NCBI RefSeq assembly: GCF_032191835.1 | Contig: NC_083234.1 | Location: forward strand, 2,232,001 to 2,296,000 | Direction: 5' to 3' | DNA: 64,000 bases | Origin: Heteronotia binoei | Lineage: Eukaryota | Shown: positions 1 to 44,700 of the stretch, one piece after another | How the letters are laid out: every line of letters begins with the position of its first letter | How positions within the stretch are numbered: the first letter of the stretch is position 1 | Program-made: the position numbers and the translations under genes | The notes under the pieces: model-generated | Database searches by the model: none | What the model saw: only the letters and a program-made list of their open reading frames with translations | Told to the model about the DNA's origin: nothing

Positions 1-14403
<14,403 letters not shown>

Positions 14404-17107: not shown

Positions 17108-31843
<14,736 letters not shown>

Positions 31844-35700: not shown

Positions 35701-38700
35701 GTTCCAGAGAGCAGGCTTGCCAAAGCCCAGTCTGGGGTCAAGGAGCTGCAGGCAGCAAGGCCTGTCCAAACCGGGGGGTTCCAGAAAAGCCAGTTGTCAG
35801 GTCCAGTCCAAGGCTGCAGAAGTGCAGTAACAGCAAGGTTGGTAGTTCAGGAGCAAAGTGTACTTGTTGTGTCCACAAACTTCGGCTTCTCCTGGCTGAA
35901 TTTACAGCCAAGCCTTTTTCAGCTAAACTCCCAGCCAGTTCCTGGTACGAATTGACACATATCTGTACTCTGTGGCTCCGTCTGAATGAGAGACTGAGCA
36001 GAGGAAGAACATTGAAACAGTCTTTAAGTTCCAGAAAGGACAAGTTGTCTTTCTCTCCCAAGTTTGGGCTTCTGTGAGAAAACTTCTCAGTGCACAGCCC
36101 TACAACAGGAGGTGGACTTTGAACCATTTTGATTGCAGCTACAATTGTTTACAGTGGAAGAGCTCTGCAGCACCAGAATTTAGAGAGGCATTGGCACAGA
36201 GTCCTGGAAGTCTGACTATTGTAATTCAGATTTCTGCAGAGATTTTGGCACCATAGGGTGTTCATAGGAAGACATGGAAGCAGTGACAGACTTCACATTT
36301 CTGGGGTTCAAGATCAATGCAGATGGTGACTGTAGCCATGAAATTAAAAGACGTTTGCTCCTTGGGAGGACAGCTATGGCAAACCTGGGCAGTATAATAA
36401 AAAGTAGAGACATCACCCTGCCAACAAAAGTCTGTATAGTCAAAGCGATGGTATTTCCAGTAGTAATGTATGGCTGTGAGAGCTGGACCATAAGGAAGGC
36501 TGAGTACAAAAGAACAGATGCTTTTGAGATGTGGTTCTGGAGAAGAATCTTGAGAGTCCCTTGGACTGCTTTGAAGATCCAATCCGTCAATCCTAAGAGA
36601 AATCAACCCAGAATGTTCCCTGGAAGGTCAGATGGTGAAGCTGGAGCTCCAATACTTTGGCCACCCAATGAGAAGGGAGCACTCCCTGGAGAAGGTCCTG
36701 ATGCTGGGAAAGGCAGAAGGCAAAAGAAGACAGGGACGGCAAAAGAGGAGATGGCTGAGCAGCATTACTGATGTAAGAAACACGAATCTGAGCAGACTTC
36801 AGAGGATGGTGGAAGACAGGAGGGCCTGGCGTGACTCGGTCCAGGGGGTCGCAAAGAGTCGGACTCGACTGTGCAACTGAACAACAACAACCAGGGTGTT
36901 CAATTAATGGCTGAGAGCTGGCTGCAGGCAGCTCTTCAGCTGATAAAGCCCAGGGCGGCCAAACTGCAGCTTGGGAGCCACAAGTGGCTCTTCAGCACAT
37001 ATTGTGTGGCTCTCAAAGCTCCCATCACCTGATCTGCTGACTGGGAGAAGACATTTCTCCCTTTCAGTCATTTCGCCAAGCCAGAGAGTGGCTAGTTGAT
37101 CATGAACTTTCAAAGACTGTGCCCTTCCTGTGTTTTCACTTTAGGTGTGCTGTATGTGAGGGTACATTTATAAGATGGTTTGTAAATTTGTACAGTTGTC
37201 TTATTGCTTCTTTGAGGCTGGTTATCACGGGACCTCAGGGTTTTCTCCTGTCACCCCAGGGGAGTGTGGCAGAAGCAGCTGCTGTGCCCCAACTGTGAGG
37301 GAGGGTGCCCACTGGTTTCCTCTGGCCTTGCAGAGCCTTGGGGCATGCTAGAAGCAGAGCAGAGGCTTTGTGGATGGTGCAGCGGGCAGAGGAGAGTGGT
37401 TGCTGTCAAACGGTCACTTCCTTAGGATTTGTAGAATCTTTCGGGCTCAAGCGCCTTGTTCTACTGGAGAAAGTTTTTCTTCCAGACGTTTTGTTCTCGG
37501 CTGCAGAGAACATCTTCAGTGGCGTTGCAGCCGGAGCATGCGCTCTGACCTTCTTGGCTGCTGAGGAGCCAACATTGTCGCCATGCCAAGCTCACTTTGC
37601 AAAGATACGGTGCTTCCGGAATTCCCAGAGCAGTCCTCTGCCAGTGGGCTTTGTGCCTGTAACTGGCCACAGAAAAGAAGAAGAAGATGATATTGGATTT
37701 ATATCCCGCCCTTCACTCCGAAGAGTCTCAGAGCGGCTCACAATCTCCTTTACCTTCCTCCCCTACAACAGACACCCTGTGAGGTGGGTGGGGCTGAGAG
37801 GGCTCTCACAGCAGCTGCCCTTTCAAGGACAACCTCTGCCAGAGCTACGGCTGACCCAAGGCCATTCCAGCAGGTGCAAGTGGAGGAGTGGGGAATCAAA
37901 CCCGGTTCTCCCAGATAAGAGTCCGCACACTTAACCACTACACCAAACTGGCTCTTTATTAGAGCTATGGCTGACCCAAGGCCATTCCAGCAGGTGTAAG
38001 TGGAGGCGTGGGGAATCAAACCCAGTTCTCCCAGATAAGAGTCCGCACACTTAACCACTGCACCAAACTGGCTCTCAGGCTGGGAGTGTTGGGCTCCGCC
38101 CCCCTCCCCCCGCCTTTGGCGCTGCTAGGCTGCAGTCTCCTGCTTGGCACACAGAGCACATCTTCTGCCTGCTCTGGTCCCTGGGATGCCTCTTTGGCGG
38201 GGAATCGTGCAAGGTGGTTCACCACAGGTGGCTTCGCTCCCGGCAGTGGAGAAAGGATCAGAGCTTCTTGGAAACTGCATCAAGTTTTTTCACAAGAGAG
38301 GCTGCTTCTCCAGCAAGCGAGAGAAGAGAGAGAGCTGCTGGGACGGCTCCTGCCCCCAGCTAAGGAGCGGCTTAGGAGAAGGGGTGCTGCTGCTGCTGGG
38401 AACTGGCTGCAGCTGAGGATCACATCCCTGTCGAAGCCTTGCTGCAGCTGCCTGCCTGGCTCAAGGGGCAGCTTCTCGACTCATAGGCGGGCTGGCTTCC
38501 AGGCCAGGGCTCTGGGTGGAGCAGAAGAAAGTCAGTCTCCGGCAATTTCACATTCATTTCTTGGAACAGAAGAATCTTGCTGGATCCGACTCTCCTGCCC
38601 CACATCCTGTTTCCCATGGAGGCTGCCCAAAGCCCCCCCCCCCCTTGCTGCTGCTCAGAGGCTAAAAGGTCCTTTCGGTCTCACTCAGGCCCTTCAGAAG

Positions 38701-41700
38701 GGCAGGGGAGCTGTCAGAGGAACATCTGCCCCGCATCTGTATGGTTGATGACAGCCACCCCTCCCTGCCACAAGGCGTATCCTGCCCAATCCAGCCCCAG
38801 GGCAGCAAGCAGGGGGAAAATAAATGATTAAAAACAACATCTAGGAACACATAAGCAGGCAAGACCAGAAGAGGGAGGAAAAGGGCCTCTGGGGGTTGTT
38901 GGGGTTTGCCAAATGAGACACAAAGGGCTTCACTCGCTGGCAAAAGACCCCGGCCGAGAGAGACAGGCCGATCTCGGGGGGCGGGGGGAGAAGGAGGGAG
39001 TTCCACAGTTTGGGTGCTTCCGGTCAGGCCTCAGACATTGGAGGCAGCTGAAGCTGGGCTTGTGAGGATGGCCAGAGTGAACAAGCGGGGGGGTTGTGGT
39101 CCTTAAGGTCTGTGGGCTGGTGCCATGTGGCTCTTTAGGTGTCCAGAAGAGTGCTCTGCAGGGTCTGTGGTTTGGGTTCTTACAAGCCTGTGAGGCAGGT
39201 CCCTCTTCAGTGTAGTGGTGAAGTGTGCCGACTCTTATCTGGGAGAACCAGGTTTGATTCCCCACTCCTCCACTTGCAGCTGCTGGGATGGCCTTGGGTC
39301 AGCCAGAGCTCTCTTATCTGGGAGAACCGGGTTTGATTCCCCACTTCTCCACTTGCACCTGCTGGCATGGCCTTGGGTCAGCCATAGCTCTGGCAGGAGT
39401 TGTCCTTGAAAGGGCAGCTGCTGTGAGAGCCCTCTCAGTCCCACCCACCTCACAGAGTGTCTGTTGTGAGGGAGGAAGTGAAAGGAGATTGTAAGTCGCT
39501 CTGAGATTCAGGGTGAAGAGCGGGATATAAATCCAATATCATCTTCATCTTTGTGAAAGAGACGAAGAGGAAGAAGCGGGTGGGGCTGCATCCAGACAAG
39601 CCCCGCTGGGGGAGGGAGGCCTCGGCTGGTGTGGCTGGCTTTGGGGGCCTGTCCATGCCCTGCGCAGTAAACCCCACCTTCTCCTTGGCCACGCAGGGAT
39701 CCGGGTTCTGGATGGGCCACTTACAGACAGCATGGAGGCGATTGCTTTCAACAAGCACTATCAGATTAATGACATCTACAGCTGCAGGTCAGTGTCTGGG
39801 CACTGTGGTGATGGCGGGGTGGTGGTGGTGGTGGGGGAAAGCAAGCCCCGTTGCTGGATTCCAGCCCCAGAAGTGAGCATGGCAGGGTGACTTCCTGACT
39901 GCCTGTCAGCCTCCCTGGGCTTGGAGCCGCAGCTCAGGCACCAACCTAGTCGTCTTCACGCGGCTGCAAGTCCCCAGAGGCCCGGACCCTCCCTCTCAGG
40001 ACGTCGGGGCTGCTGCCGCTGCTGCTCTGGCTCTCCGGCCTCTGGAATGCGCCTGCTCCCGGGTGTTGCTAAGCCCTGCTTTGGGGTGTCTCCCTGCACA
40101 GCTGGGGTCCAGATGATGATGGCAAAACCGTGGATGGGCCTCACCAGCTTGGAAAGGTATGGAGGAGTTAGGTTGCTTTGCTGTGGTTTGGGGGCCTGGA
40201 AGCTGCAGGATGCCCCACCCCCCTTACACCGCCTGCTGGGAGAGCAGGATCATGGAAGCGTGGTTTGAGCAGGAGGCATCCTGAGGCAGGGGTGGAACAG
40301 TCCCTGAGCTTACCTGGGCTAATGTTCAAAACCTGCCCAGCTGACCTGGTGGGGAGGGGAGAGAGATCCTCCGATCCCAGCGCCCCTCCCCGTCTTTGGC
40401 AGACACACTTCAGCAGTGGCTGCCGTGGCCCCCTGTGGGTGTCTGTGGTGGGAGAGCCTCCCCAGGAAGCCTCCTGTCTGTCCTCTGCTGCAGGCTGCCT
40501 TGCAGCATGGCGTGATCGCCGGCCGGCGGGGGTTCGGCAGCATTTTTGTGGTGGCCAGTGGCAACGGAGGACAGCACAATGACAACTGCAACTACGACGG
40601 CTATGCCAACTCCATTTACACCGTCACCATTGGTAAGGCACCCAGGACATGTGTTGGTATGGCAGGTTGCTCTGGGCGGGAGAGAGAAAGAGAGGAAGTG
40701 GTGCTGCCAGGTGGGACCCAGAAGTCTGCTCCAGCGCAGGTCTCAGCTGTGGACCTTCCTAGTTCTTTAGTGGTGCTTGCTCGCCACATTGGCCAGAAGC
40801 CTTCTGAGAGCAGGCAGGGGTTCTCTGCCCAGTGGCCACGCATGCCAGGCCTGAGTGCTTTCCTCTGTCTGGGGTTCCTACCCTGAGTCTGCAGGGCACA
40901 TCTGCTGCCTAAACTGCCGTTTTGTGTAATGCAGAGTGTTGGACTGGATGGGCCGTTGGCCTGACCCTACATGGCTTCTCTTTCACGCTCTTGGATGAGG
41001 CCCTGCTTGTGGCCTTCCCTGTGGGATTTGGCTTGCTGCTGCTGAAGCAAGGTGCAGGTCTGATCCTGCTGCACAGTTCTTAAACATCCTAGAAATGAGC
41101 CCACATGGAGGAGAGCTCTAACTGTGGCCACTAGCCATGGTGACTAAAAGGAACTTCCATGTTCAGAGGCAGTCAGCCCTGAATCCCAGAACCAGGAAGC
41201 AGCATCGGGGAAGGCCTTGGCCTCTCTGCCCTGTTGCTGGTCCTCCAGAGGAACTGGCCGGCCACTGTGTGAGACAGGAGGCTGGACTAGATGGACCCTC
41301 CCTGGTCTGATCCAGCAGGGCCCTTCTGATGTTCTTCTCAGGGGAAGGCCTCAGCCTCTCTGCCCTGTTACTGGCCCTCCAGAGGAACTGGTTGGCCACT
41401 GTGCAAGACAGGATGGACCCTCACTGGTCTGACCCAGCAGGGCTCTTCTGATGTTCTTCTCAGGGGAAGGGCTCGGCCTCTCTGCCCTGTTGTTGGCCCT
41501 CCAGAGGAACTGGCCGGCCACTGTGTGAGACAGGAGGCTGGACTAGATGGACCCTCCCTGGTCTGATCCAGCAGGGCCCTTCTGATGTTCTTCTCAGGGG
41601 AAGGCCTCAGCCTCTCTGCCCTGTTACTGGCCCTCCAGAGGAACTGGCCGGCCACTGTGTGAGACAGGAGGCTGGACTAGATGGACCCTCCCTGGTCTGA

Positions 41701-44700
41701 TCCAGCAGGGCCCTTCTGATGTTCTTCTCAGGGGAAGGCCTCAGCCTCTCTGCCCTGTTACTGGCCCTCCAGAGGAACTGGTTGGCCACTGTGCAAGACA
41801 GGATGGACCCTCACTGGTCTGACCCAGCAGGGCTCTTCTGATGTTCTTCTCAGGGGAAGGGCTCGGCCTCTCTGCCCTGTTGTTGGCCCTCCAGAGGAAC
41901 TGGCCGGCCACTGTGTGAGACAGGAGGCTGGACTAGATGGACCCTCCCTGGTCTGATCCAGCAGGGCCCTTCTGATGTTCTTCTCAGGGGAAGGGCTCGG
42001 CCTCTCTGCCCTGTTGTTGGCCCTCCAGAGGAACTGGCCGGCCACTGTGTGAGACAGGAGGCTGGACTAGATGGACCCTCCCTGGTCTGATCCAGCAGGG
42101 CCCTTCTGATGTTCTTCTCAGGGGAAGGCCTCAGCCTCTCTGCCCTGTTACTGGCCCTCCAGAGGAACTGGTTGGCCACTGTGCAAGACAGGATGGACCC
42201 TCACTGGTCTGACCCAGCAGGGCTCTTCTGATGTTCTTTTCAGGGGAAGACCTTGGCCTCTGCCCTGCTGTTGGCCCTCCAGAGGAAGTGGTTGGCCACT
42301 GTGTGAGACAGGAGACTGCACTAGATGGACCCTCCCTGGTCTGACCCAGCAGGGCTCTTCTGATGTTCTTCTCAGGGGAAGGCCTGGGCCTCTCTGCCCT
42401 GCTGTTGGCCCTCCAGAGAAACTGATTATGCACTGTGTGAGACAGGGGGCTGGACTAGATGGACCCTCCCTAGTCTGATCCAGCAGGACTCTACTGGTGT
42501 TCTCAGAGGAAGGCCTTGGCCTTGGCCTCTGCCCTGTTGTTGGCCCTCCAGAGGAACTGGCTGGCCATTGTGTGAGACAGGATGCTGGACTAGATGAGCC
42601 CTCCCTGATCTGATCCAGCAGGGCTCTTCTGATGTTCTTCTCAGGGGAAGGCCTGGGCCTCTCTGCCCTGCTGTTGGCCCTCCAGAGAAACTGATTATGC
42701 ACTGTGTGAGACAGGAGACTGTACTAGATGGACCCTCCCTGGTCTGACCCAGCAGGGCTCTTCTGATGTTCTTTTCAGGGGAAGACCTTGGCCTCTGCCC
42801 TGCTGTTGGCCCTCCAGAGGAAGTGGTTGGCCACTGTGTGAGACAGGAGACTGCACTAGATGGACCCTCCCTGGTCTGACCCAGCAGGGCTCTTCTGATG
42901 TTCTTCTCAGGGGAAGGCCTGGGCCTCTCTGCCCTGCTGTTGGCCCTCCAGAGAAACTGATTATGCACTGTGTGAGACAGGGGGCTGGACTAGATGGACC
43001 CTCCCTAGTCTGATCCAGCAGGACTCTACTGGTGTTCTCAGAGGAAGGCCTTGGCCTCTCTGCCCTGTTGTTGGCCCTCCAGAGGAACTGGCTGGCCATT
43101 GTGTGAGACAGGATGCTGGACTAGATGAGCCCTCCCTGATCTGATCCAGCAGGACTCTTTTGATGTTCTTCTCAGTGGAAGGCCTCAGCCTCTCTGCCCT
43201 GTTGTTGGCCCTCCAGAGGAGCTGATTATCCACTGTGTGAGACAGGAGGCTGGACTAGATGGACCCCCCCTGGTTTGATTCAGCAGAACTCTTCTGATGT
43301 TCTTCTGAGGGGAAGGCCTCGGCCTTTCTGCCCTGTTGTTGGTCCTCCAGAGGAAGTGGTTGGTCACTGTGTGAGACAGGAGGCTAGATTAGATGGGCCT
43401 TCCCTGGTCTGATCCTGCAGGGCTCTTCTGGTGTTCTTAACTGTAGGGGAAAGCCTTCGCTTTTAGCCCTGAGGTTGGCCTTCCAGGGGCACTGGCTGGC
43501 CACTGTGTGACGTGGGATTCTGGACCACATGGGCCATTGCTCTGATCTAGCAGGTGGTCTTCTGGTGGTCTTATATAGATCACGAATGTGGCAGACCTTA
43601 GTTAGATTAATTGTATTGCAGGCATTAGTACTCATTTGTTTATGCCTTAACTGGAGCACACTTCTGAATGAGCAATGCACTTAGACTTGATTTGAGTGGT
43701 TCAGATTTCGGCCCAACAGAAGAGCTGGATCTGGCTTCCTGGGACTGCCGTCTGGGGGCCTCCAGGGGCCATGGCTCTCCCAGTCCCTGCTCAGAATGCA
43801 AGGGCCAGGCCGGAGGCAGTGGGGGAGATCCCCCAGGATCCCACGTGCTGATGAGATCCCATTGACTTGCCCCAGAATAAGAAACTCCATTTCACTAGCG
43901 GCACTTCTGGAAAGCGGACTCCAGTTCTGTTGGGAAAGGGGCTTGCCACCTCTCAGGTCCTCCTTAGGAGTGGGTTGGGGTTTGCGTGCCTGTGTGCAGA
44001 GCCAGCCTGGCAGCCCCGTCCCTGTCTCCCTCCTCTCTCCAGGCGCAGTGGACGAGATGGGCTACATGCCCTTCTATGCGGAGGAGTGTGCCTCGATGCT
44101 GGCTGTCACCTTCAGTGGGGGCGACAAGCTGATGAGGAGCATTGTAAGTGGGGCCCCCCTCGGGAGAAGCGGGGGAGGGGCAGCCAGGCACTCATTCCTG
44201 TTTGTTTCTGTCGCCCTCCGGTGGAGTTCCTGTTCTCCTGCCATCCAGCAAGCTCCAGCAGTGCTTTGGCTGCTCCACGCCACTGACCAGCTCGTGGGCT
44301 TCACTTGTGCCAAGCTGAGTGGGCCAAAGGGAAGGGGGTGTTAAACTTCCTTTGGGGCTCGCTGTTTCAACCCATAGCATTTCCAGAAGCCAATCTAATT
44401 CCCTGACCTTCTCTATCTTACTGGACTGTGTACCCCCCACCCCCCTCTGACACACAGAGCCACCCCACCTGCAGCCCTTCCCCGCCCCCATCCTTCTGAC
44501 ATAATTTATATCCAGGAATCACCGTGTCCCACTGATTCTCCTCATCCCACCAAGTTTCTGAAATGCCCGCAGTGTCCAAGTTCCCCCCCAACACTAAGCG
44601 TTCCAATTCCCTGATTTTGCCTCCAGACACTTTTGGCATTTGTGTATCAAGATCTCTAATTTCCCAGGCATGTTGGTTTGACTGCCTCTGAATGGGGAGG

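What the first reader, a model, noticed from the sequence alone, without database searches (positions are those of the whole stretch)
41085..43575. Satellite born from a CR1 LINE 3' end, with 3-mer and 4-mer higher-order repeats, inside PCSK7
Seen: one CR1 3' UTR segment (41085-41200) is followed by ~18 tandem units, each running from GGGGAAGGCC to the CR1 tail (GACC-CTCCCT-GGTC hairpin, then CTTCTGATGTTCTT). Spacings 134/122/134 repeat as a 390-bp higher-order unit (41241, 41631, 42021); the short monomers share a 12-bp deletion. A 535-bp four-unit repeat follows (42275/42810, 42409/42944), and the rightmost units are the most diverged. Inference: stepwise amplification of a LINE terminus into a structured minisatellite. 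It is in the PCSK7 sense orientation, so the pre-mRNA carries ~18 CR1 RT recognition ends, a possible substrate for trans-mobilisation. It is probably a length-polymorphic VNTR. I do not know of this array being described.
Basis: partly seen in the sequence, partly recalled or inferred. Interest (0 to 1): 0.72.

Follow-up and report, generated by a model that had tools for sequence, protein, structure and literature searches.

The report
CR1 LINE-tail minisatellite in convertase intron
The last 134 bases of a CR1 jumping gene have been copied head-to-tail 18 times inside an intron of a PCSK7-like gene of a gecko; the array is real, but it is one more case of a known process in which pieces of mobile elements grow into satellite DNA.

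Summary
From 41207 to about 43575 there are 18 head-to-tail units of 122-138 bp. There is a 390-bp three-unit repeat at 99% identity, with a 363-bp exact run, and a 535-bp four-unit repeat with a 319-bp exact run. The two rightmost units are the most diverged.

The units are the 3' end of a CR1-type LINE, not of a SINE. The 122 bp before the first unit carry the last ORF2 codons and the stop, and match other CR1 copies in the window. Each unit carries the CR1 stem-loop, which is supported by two compensatory pairs. The same sequence is very abundant in contigs from other sequencing runs.

Copies of each unit type share changes that the dispersed copies lack. The array therefore grew at the DNA level, in blocks of one, three and four units, and not in one burst of reverse transcription. 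How the first duplication arose is open. Its right end lies in the terminal microsatellite of the CR1.

The array lies on the sense strand of an intron between two consecutive kexin/furin-type exons. I did not test the PCSK7 name beyond that family.

Trans-mobilisation and length polymorphism remain untested.

The scan has already noted many CR1-tail arrays elsewhere in this genome, with 67-bp and 184-bp units. Published parallels exist. Verdict: a new member of a known kind, of modest interest.

The parts
40494..40632 (+). Upstream exon of the host gene (kexin/furin-type proprotein convertase catalytic domain; PCSK7-like)
   Evidence: Frame-1 translation is open. phmmer to PDB matches kexin residues 170-215, E 8e-14, and furin 168-210. 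Weak Peptidase_S8 hit. AG acceptor before 40494 and GTAAGG donor at 40633.
40633..44042 (+). Phase-1 intron of 3410 bp; the array makes up about 69% of it
   Evidence: Splice sites read directly. The two exon peptides match consecutive furin residues, 168-210 then 213-237.
40923..40991 (+). Older solitary CR1 3' end of the short-UTR subfamily, same strand, about 95 bp upstream of the array-bearing CR1
   Evidence: nhmmer with a tail profile, E 2.4e-19; alignment A1; very high depth in other runs.
41085..41206 (+). Head: the 5'-truncated CR1 body before the first unit. It holds the last about 9 ORF2 codons (41105-41131), the stop TAG at 41132-41134 and about 72 nt of proximal 3' UTR.
   Evidence: 41105-41138 aligns without gaps to the ORF2 end plus stop of four other CR1 copies in the window (z 3.1-9.8 against shuffles). 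In dispersed copies of other runs, the sequence upstream of the unit start matches 41180-41206, and depth falls towards the 5' side. No tRNA and no Rfam family.
41207..42242 (+). Units m1-m8: the young domain, built of a 390-bp three-unit block (134+122+134) repeated about 2.6 times
   Evidence: Blocks 99.0% identical with a 363-bp exact run. m3=m6=m7 and m2=m5. Clade m2/m5/m8 has support 100/99. The last about 40 nt of m8 belong to the 535-bp repeat.
42243..43308 (+). Units m9-m16: the domain with a 535-bp four-unit duplication; m12 is a hybrid unit
   Evidence: m9=m13, m10=m14, m11/m15 96%, and m12 is 91% to both m9 and m10. 319-bp exact run at offset 535. Clade m10/m14/m12 has support 95/90.
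43309..43575 (+). Units m17 and m18: old, unhomogenised right edge. m18 ends in the CR1 terminus, followed by unique intron DNA.
   Evidence: Identity 77-86% (m17) and 64-73% (m18) to the other units. m18 branch length 0.33. nhmmer tail hit 43497-43575. Depth in other runs drops to zero from 43604.
44043..44143 (+). Downstream exon of the host gene
   Evidence: The translation from 44045 is open and matches furin 213-237, E 0.03. Acceptor AG at 44041-44042 and donor GTAAGT at 44144.

Best explanation
This is an intronic minisatellite derived from a LINE tail.

Shown: a severely 5'-truncated CR1-type LINE lies on the sense strand of an intron of a kexin/furin-type convertase gene. It consists of the last ORF2 codons, the stop and the 3' UTR.

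Inferred: its terminal ~134-137 bp were duplicated once or a few times. These bases hold the distal UTR, the conserved stem-loop and the octamer-like tail. The right breakpoint lies inside the terminal microsatellite, just after GTTCTT. The left breakpoint lies in the UTR just before GGGGAAGG.

Shown by the pattern of shared changes: the seed then grew, and is still turning over, by ordinary DNA-level mechanisms. These are unequal exchange, replication slippage and gene conversion, in register of one, three (390 bp) and four (535 bp) units. Growth was most recent on the left. The two right-edge units escaped homogenisation.

No function needs to be invoked. The likely consequences are length variation, and a row of CR1 stem-loops and splice-site-like motifs in the pre-mRNA.
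For: Array and block structure.

LINE origin: the ORF2 end and stop upstream of unit 1 align to four other CR1 copies. The stem-loop of 10 pairs is 91% paired over 15 tails against 17-52% in slid controls, with compensatory CG/UA and GC/AU changes between the two CR1 subfamilies. The tail reads as two octamer-like repeats. In three other runs, summed contig depth is 1e5-1e6 on the units and on the solitary tail at 40868-40981, about ten times less on the head, and zero on the unique flanks. Upstream of the unit start the dispersed copies carry the head sequence.

DNA-level growth: copies of each unit type share states that the dispersed copies lack. m1, m3, m6 and m7 share C at unit positions 52 and/or 115 (41259, 41515, 42039; 41322, 41968, 42102). 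m2 and m8 share A at position 30 (41370, 42150), and m8 also has CA at 42184-85. m11 and m15 share T (42568, 43099). These are, table 3, read. m4 and m5 are identical to their sister units at these positions. There are also exact runs of 319-363 bp next to units only 64-86% alike, a hybrid unit m12 and a chimeric m8.
Against: No reads or contigs of the source individual covered the unique flanks, so copy number and block order rest on the assembly alone.

The seeding step is not resolved. The unit ends at the LINE terminus here, and also at the second multi-tail CR1 in this window (25163-25350). That hints at a step linked to retrotransposition rather than a random DNA duplication.

The CR1 clade assignment rests on the 3' structure and the ORF2 C-terminus. 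No EN/RT domain of this subfamily is in the window, and Pfam found nothing in the C-terminal ORFs.
Confidence: 0.8

Rival explanations
1. The whole array was made in one retrotransposition event, by repeated re-priming or template jumping of the CR1 reverse transcriptase on the RNA 3' end.
For: Every unit ends at the CR1 terminus, within the terminal microsatellite. The same holds for the three-tail CR1 at 25163-25350. Contigs of other runs also show tail-to-head joints (tables 5c and 7).
Against: Units range from 64% to 100% identity. Copies of one unit type share private changes and a private 12-bp deletion that the dispersed copies lack. Multi-unit blocks of 390 and 535 bp are 99-100% identical next to old units. 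A hybrid unit is present. One burst would give units of equal age.
Confidence: 0.05
2. It is a SINE-derived satellite of the kind described in geckos, for example the ~130-nt Squam3-derived unit of Gekko japonicus, and not a LINE derivative.
For: Unit length (~134 nt), the unit ending at the element's 3' terminus, and one longer terminal unit all match the published architecture (PMC10702118).
Against: The sequence before unit 1 is a CR1 ORF2 end with its stop codon, not a tRNA-derived head. ARAGORN and Rfam find nothing. BLAST of head plus unit against the window hits only CR1 tails and none of the tRNA-like SINE copies. The Squam3 consensus itself was not available for a direct comparison.
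Confidence: 0.03
3. The array exists, but its copy number or block order is an assembly artefact: collapse, expansion or a haplotype mix in near-identical 390-bp blocks.
For: Exact repeats of 319-363 bp are hard to assemble, and no independent reads covered the locus.
Against: The units carry many distinguishing changes. The two block domains join inside m8 in a coherent way, and the edges run smoothly into unique intron DNA.
Confidence: 0.1
4. The array is kept because it does something: it acts as a splicing decoy or a source of pseudo-exons, as a regulatory block for the host gene, or as an internal entry site for the CR1 reverse transcriptase.
For: 12 of 17 junctions read as a pyrimidine tract followed by CAG|G. 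14 units carry a GTGAGA donor-like site about 61 nt downstream, all on the sense strand. Each unit holds the CR1 stem-loop. A scan note reports a PAF1 retrocopy that ends in an intronic CR1 tail in this genome (not checked here).
Against: The RNA run showed no supported joints in the array. About 80% of its reads were only 90-95% alike, so they came from other copies. Units decay freely: three lack the outer stem and m18 is 27-36% diverged. The turnover pattern is that of neutral tandem DNA.
Confidence: 0.05

Closest known systems
SINE-derived satellites (sSat) of squamates (Vassetzky, Kosushkin & Ryskov 2023, PMC10702118)
   Same: Both are tandem units that correspond to part of a retroposon, with one longer terminal unit that continues into the element. 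Both show alternating di- and trimeric unit variants, greater homogeneity in the amplified parts, and independent origins at many loci. Geckos are the richest group, and one gecko unit of about 130 nt includes the element's 3' terminus.
   Different: The source here is a LINE (CR1 ORF2 end plus 3' UTR), not a tRNA-derived SINE. That paper did not treat LINE tails.
Tandem arrays derived from LINE/CR1 and SINE/tRNA-V in frog subtelomeres (PMC10794172)
   Same: Both are minisatellite expansions of a fragment of a retroposon's 3' UTR or tail. The paper attributes them to recombination-driven expansion and names LINE/CR1 among the sources.
   Different: Those arrays are in amphibians and enriched in subtelomeres, and the example they describe in detail has a 52-bp unit. 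The chromosomal position of this locus is unknown, and it lies inside a gene intron.
Chicken HinfI repeat containing CR1 3' UTR and partial ORF2 (Li & Leung 2006); cetacean common satellite from the L1 3' end; both as listed in the review PMC9659126
   Same: Both are satellite or tandem repeats whose monomer derives from the 3' part of a LINE, including a CR1.
   Different: I know these only from the review's table. Their monomers are larger and composite, and they form genome-wide satellite families. This is one 2.4-kb locus with a unit that stops at the LINE terminus.
CR1-tail arrays noted by this scan elsewhere in the same genome (s1-330106, s1-321173, s1-323886 and others)
   Same: They are in the same genome and come from the same kind of element. 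The unit ends at the CR1 terminus, and the follow-up agents reached the same conclusion: a short seed followed by DNA-level growth.
   Different: Their units are 67 bp and 184 bp; here the unit is 134 bp, from a long-UTR subfamily. I could not see their sequences. Only the 67/59-bp triple tail in my own window (25163-25350) was checked.

Membership tests
CR1-clade LINE 3' end | ORF2 C-terminus and stop codon directly upstream of the 3' UTR | tested here: met
   41105-41138 aligns without gaps to the last codons plus TAG of four other CR1 copies in the window, z 3.1-9.8. Those copies carry an open C-terminal ORF that runs into the same tail.
CR1-clade LINE 3' end | Conserved 3' hairpin upstream of the tail (PMC8665684, PMC4316615) | tested here: met
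   Two 5-bp stems are 91.3% paired over 15 tails, against 17-52% in slid controls. There are compensatory changes at two pairs between subfamilies. 6 of 18 units keep all ten pairs and three units lack the outer stem.
CR1-clade LINE 3' end | Terminal octamer microsatellite (ATTCTRTG)n (PMC8665684) | tested here: inconclusive
   The tail reads as two octamer-like repeats (TTCTGATG, then TTCTT followed by ATG in dispersed copies). This is a variant of the published octamer. Inner units are cut just after GTTCTT.
CR1-clade LINE 3' end | Endonuclease and reverse-transcriptase ORF of the CR1 clade | not tested
   No full-length copy of this subfamily is in the window. Pfam found no domain in the C-terminal ORF pieces and the protein atlas gave only unnamed eukaryotic clusters.
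CR1-clade LINE 3' end | High copy number with loss of copies towards the 5' end (5' truncation) | tested here: met
   Summed contig depth in three runs is 3e5-6e6 on the units, 3e4-2e5 on 41096-41209, and 4e2-8e2 on 40982-41095.
SINE-derived satellite (sSat) sensu Vassetzky et al. 2023 | Monomer derived from a Squam1/2/3 SINE | tested here: not met
   The head is a LINE ORF2 end. There is no tRNA-like head, and there is no similarity to the SINE copies of the window. A direct comparison with the SINE consensus sequences was not possible.
SINE-derived satellite (sSat) sensu Vassetzky et al. 2023 | Architecture: four or more tandem units plus a longer terminal unit that reaches into the element | tested here: met
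   18 units, with the head 41085-41206 continuing the element on the 5' side.
Higher-order-repeat tandem array | Multi-unit blocks more alike than neighbouring units | tested here: met
   Neighbouring units are 75-97% identical, apart from the identical pair m6/m7. 390-bp blocks are 99.0% identical, and the 535-bp offset has a 319-bp exact run.
Satellite family (many loci, concerted evolution between loci) | The same unit and junction at many genomic loci | not testable with these tools
   Only this window can be read. Contigs of other runs show tail-to-head joints with a slightly different junction, which is suggestive only.
VNTR | Array length differs between individuals | not testable with these tools
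   No run covered the unique flanks, and the reads tool's single call was used.

The most novel reading that the evidence does not exclude
In this gecko lineage CR1 3' ends may seed tandem arrays through a step tied to retrotransposition. The reverse transcriptase could jump back to an RNA 3' end, or extremely truncated copies could be primed on the microsatellite of an existing tail. That would explain why units of 59/67, 134 and 184 bp all stop at the LINE terminus. It would make LINE tails a systematic generator of satellites. Sense-strand arrays in introns, like this one, would then place many reverse-transcriptase recognition signals in pre-mRNAs and favour chimeric retrocopies.
Probability: 0.15. 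Interest if true: 0.6.

Novelty: new member of a known kind. Interest (0 to 1): 0.28.

Why it matters
This is a clean, datable example of how a mobile-element fragment becomes a structured tandem array. One locus shows the parent element, old edge units, a hybrid unit, and two generations of higher-order blocks.

Taken with the other CR1-tail arrays that the scan noted in this genome, it suggests that geckos make satellites from LINE tails as well as from SINEs. I found no paper in the searchable library that describes this.

For the host gene it matters only as a likely length-variable block of 2.4 kb that fills two thirds of an intron and carries repeated splice-site-like motifs. It is not evidence of a new mechanism or function.

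Tried and rejected
1. Independent read support. The one run search found no run holding more than 0.21 of the sampled words. Laying four runs showed that they hold the dispersed CR1 family but not this locus: depth is zero on the unique flanks. Spanning, allele length and locus-specific RNA therefore could not be tested.

2. Minimum-free-energy folds of the single tails gave varying structures and did not always show the canonical hairpin. I used pair counting on an alignment instead.

3. MAFFT misaligned the head against the other CR1 copies. A local alignment with shuffles was needed.

4. Pfam and the protein atlas did not name the CR1 ORF2 C-terminal pieces. Rfam and ARAGORN found nothing in the intron.

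5. The stretch 40992-41084 as a further degenerate tail gave only weak colinear matches, z 1.1-4.7. It is not claimed.

6. I looked for a bias in the direction of the private changes, as GC-biased conversion would give. They are mixed, so I dropped the idea (table 3).

7. Searching the paper library for three 14-16-nt motifs of the tail gave no hit. The supplements of the sSat paper do not hold the motifs.

8. Minus-strand ORFs of up to 184 aa across the array are a mechanical result of repeating stop-free DNA and were not pursued.

9. The joined protein was not built or searched, so the PCSK7 name is not confirmed. The large protein searches were not used.


Full report
OBSERVATION

Tandem Repeats Finder reports one array at 41207-43510 with period 134, 17.5 copies and 85% matches. 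It also reports periods 256 and 390. Anchor motifs give 18 unit starts, with spacings of 134/122/134/134/122/134/134/122/132/131/138/134/132/131/134/134/137.

In the unit alignment, the three 122-bp units (m2, m5, m8) share one 12-bp deletion. m3, m6 and m7 are identical, as are m2 and m5, m9 and m13, and m10 and m14. m11 and m15 are 96% alike. m12 is a hybrid, 91% to both m9 and m10. m17 is 77-86% and m18 is 64-73% identical to the rest.

The 390-bp blocks are 99.0% identical, with a 363-bp exact run from 41242. At offset 535 there is a 319-bp exact run, 42204-42522. It starts inside m8, so m8 is a chimera of the two block domains. A maximum-likelihood tree recovers (m2, m5, m8) at 100/99 and (m10, m14, m12) at 95/90, and puts m18 on a long branch. 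The window holds no N.

WHAT THE UNIT IS

The 122 bp before unit 1 (41085-41206) are not part of the repeat. Positions 41105-41138 align without gaps to the last ORF2 codons plus the TAG stop of four other CR1-like copies in the window. The z scores are 3.1 to 9.8 against shuffles. Those copies carry an open C-terminal ORF that runs into the same kind of tail.

A profile of the last ~80 bp finds the 18 units plus independent tails at 12238, 21935, 25156-25360 (three in a row), 40923 and 48804.

Over 15 different tails, a two-stem hairpin of ten pairs is 91% paired, against 17-52% when the partners are slid. Two pairs changed on both sides between the short-UTR and the long-UTR subfamily (CG/UA and GC/AU). 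The tail after the hairpin reads as two octamer-like repeats. A hairpin plus an octamer microsatellite is the published signature of CR1 3' ends and the presumed recognition site of the CR1 reverse transcriptase (PMC8665684, PMC4316615).

No tRNA and no Rfam family lie in the intron. BLAST of the head plus unit hits only CR1 tails, not the tRNA-like SINE copies of the window. The source is therefore a LINE and not a SINE. The CR1 clade was not confirmed through an RT domain: Pfam and the protein atlas were uninformative on the C-terminal ORFs.

EVIDENCE FROM OTHER RUNS

No public run held more than 0.21 of the sampled words. The holders carry more than ten coded organism labels. I laid three contig runs of DNA or unrecorded type and one RNA run.
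- Summed depth is 1e5-1e6 on the units and on the solitary tail at 40868-40981.
- Depth is about ten times lower on 41096-41209, a few hundred on 40982-41095, and zero on the unique flanks 40754-40867 and 43604-43831.
- These runs therefore do not hold this locus. They hold a very abundant dispersed family whose copy number falls towards the 5' side, as expected of 5'-truncated LINEs.
- Upstream of the unit start, the dispersed copies carry the same sequence as the head (loose ends at 43038). After GTTCTT they read ATG and then diverge, which marks the element's terminus.
- Some contigs go from a tail back to a unit start (42630 to 41207; 43439 to 43312). The loose ends behind the tail begin alike in three runs. 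Tail-to-head joints with a slightly different junction therefore probably exist elsewhere. I could not follow this up.

HOW IT GREW

Table 3 shows where the window differs from the bulk of the dispersed copies. Those private states are shared by copies of one unit type.
- m1, m3, m6 and m7 share C at unit positions 52 and/or 115 (41259, 41515, 42039; 41322, 41968, 42102). m4 is identical there.
- m2 and m8 share A at unit position 30 (41370, 42150). m8 also has CA at 42184-85. m5 is identical to m2.
- m11 and m15 share T (42568, 43099).

Units that had already mutated were thus copied in place. The evidence for DNA-level growth is:
- exact runs of 319-363 bp lying next to units only 64-86% alike;
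- the hybrid unit m12 and the chimeric m8;
- a clear left-young, right-old gradient.

This is the pattern left by unequal exchange, slippage and conversion in register of one, three and four units. It rules out one burst of reverse transcription for the array as a whole.

The seed is a different matter. The oldest junction (m17/m18, spacing 137) and the younger ones place the right breakpoint just after GTTCTT, three bases short of the family terminus. The left breakpoint lies in the UTR just before GGGGAAGG, with at most two bases of shared sequence.

The second multi-tail CR1 in this window (25163-25350, minus strand, units 67 and 59 bp) also ends its units in the terminal microsatellite. 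A random DNA duplication does not predict that regularity. The candidates for the first step are a template jump, the priming of a very short new copy on an existing tail, or microhomology-mediated slippage at the microsatellite. I cannot tell these apart with this window.

HOST GENE

The exon 40494-40632 matches kexin 170-215 (E 8e-14) and furin 168-210. The exon 44043-44143 matches furin 213-237. The splice sites are canonical and the intron (40633-44042) is phase 1. The array is on the sense strand and fills 69% of the intron.

The joined protein was neither built nor searched. The PCSK7 name therefore rests on family membership, on a scan note that places RNF214 next door, and on my memory of the human locus. 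The species name (Bynoe's gecko) comes from a scan note, not from my own test.

POSSIBLE CONSEQUENCES

Twelve of the 17 junctions read as a pyrimidine tract followed by CAG|G. Fourteen units carry a GTGAGA donor-like site about 61 nt downstream. The sense pre-mRNA therefore carries a row of pseudo-exon signals.

The RNA run showed no supported joint. About 80% of its reads came from other copies, being only 90-95% alike. Nothing suggests that these signals are used.

The signals are also internal to the RNA, not at its 3' end. A scan note reports a retrocopy that ended in an intronic CR1 tail, but I did not check it.

COMPARISON AND NOVELTY

- SINE-derived satellites are described in 56 squamate genomes and are richest in geckos. 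They share the architecture seen here: tandem units, one longer terminal unit, alternating unit variants, and more homogeneity in the amplified parts (PMC10702118).
- Frog subtelomeric arrays derive from portions of SINE/tRNA-V and LINE/CR1 (PMC10794172).
- A review lists a chicken tandem repeat that contains CR1 3' UTR and ORF2, and a cetacean satellite from the L1 3' end (PMC9659126).
- The scan has already noted many CR1-tail arrays in this genome, with 67-bp and 184-bp units. Its follow-up agents reached the same reading.
- No paper in the library prints the tail motif or describes CR1-derived arrays in geckos.

The locus is thus a new member of a known kind. It is well preserved and instructive, but it is neither a new mechanism nor a new function.

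Noticed in passing
window 25163-25350 (minus strand), element body up to about 25650: A second CR1 copy, of the short-UTR subfamily with an open ORF2 C-terminus, ends in three tails in a row (units 67 and 59 bp). Each is cut in the terminal microsatellite. This matches the 67-bp CR1-tail arrays that the scan noted elsewhere in this genome.
   Followed up: partly
window 2802-3059, 37841-38075, 39232-39391: Three tandem dimers (periods 137, 120 and 79; 93-95% matches) are made of parts of tRNA-like SINEs. They may be two-unit seeds of the SINE-derived satellites described in geckos.
   Followed up: no
window 40923-41084: A solitary CR1 tail (40923-40991) lies on the same strand as the array. A stretch with weak colinear matches to the array unit (40992-41084, z 1.1-4.7) lies directly before the array-bearing CR1. 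There may therefore be three CR1 3' ends in a row, as if new copies landed on older tails.
   Followed up: partly
window 41339-42910 (unit junctions) and 41269-43371: 12 of 17 junctions form a pyrimidine tract followed by CAG|G, preceded by CTGAT branch-point-like motifs. 14 units hold TGT|GTGAGA about 61 nt downstream. These are repeated pseudo-exon signals on the sense strand of the host gene. No RNA support was seen.
   Followed up: partly
contigs of runs X2 and X3 laid on window 41207-43445: Contigs of other organisms join a CR1 tail back to a unit start (42630 to 41207; 43439 to 43312) or to mid-unit (41455 to 41276) at depths of 300-750. Tail multimers of this subfamily therefore probably exist in related genomes, with slightly different junctions.
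   Followed up: partly
window 28015-28590 (minus strand): Two adjacent ORFs (105 and 81 aa) look like a further CR1 ORF2 C-terminal fragment of another subfamily.
   Followed up: no
window 41368-43680 (minus strand): ORFs of 90-184 aa run antisense through the array. They are most likely a mechanical result of repeating stop-free GC-rich units.
   Followed up: no
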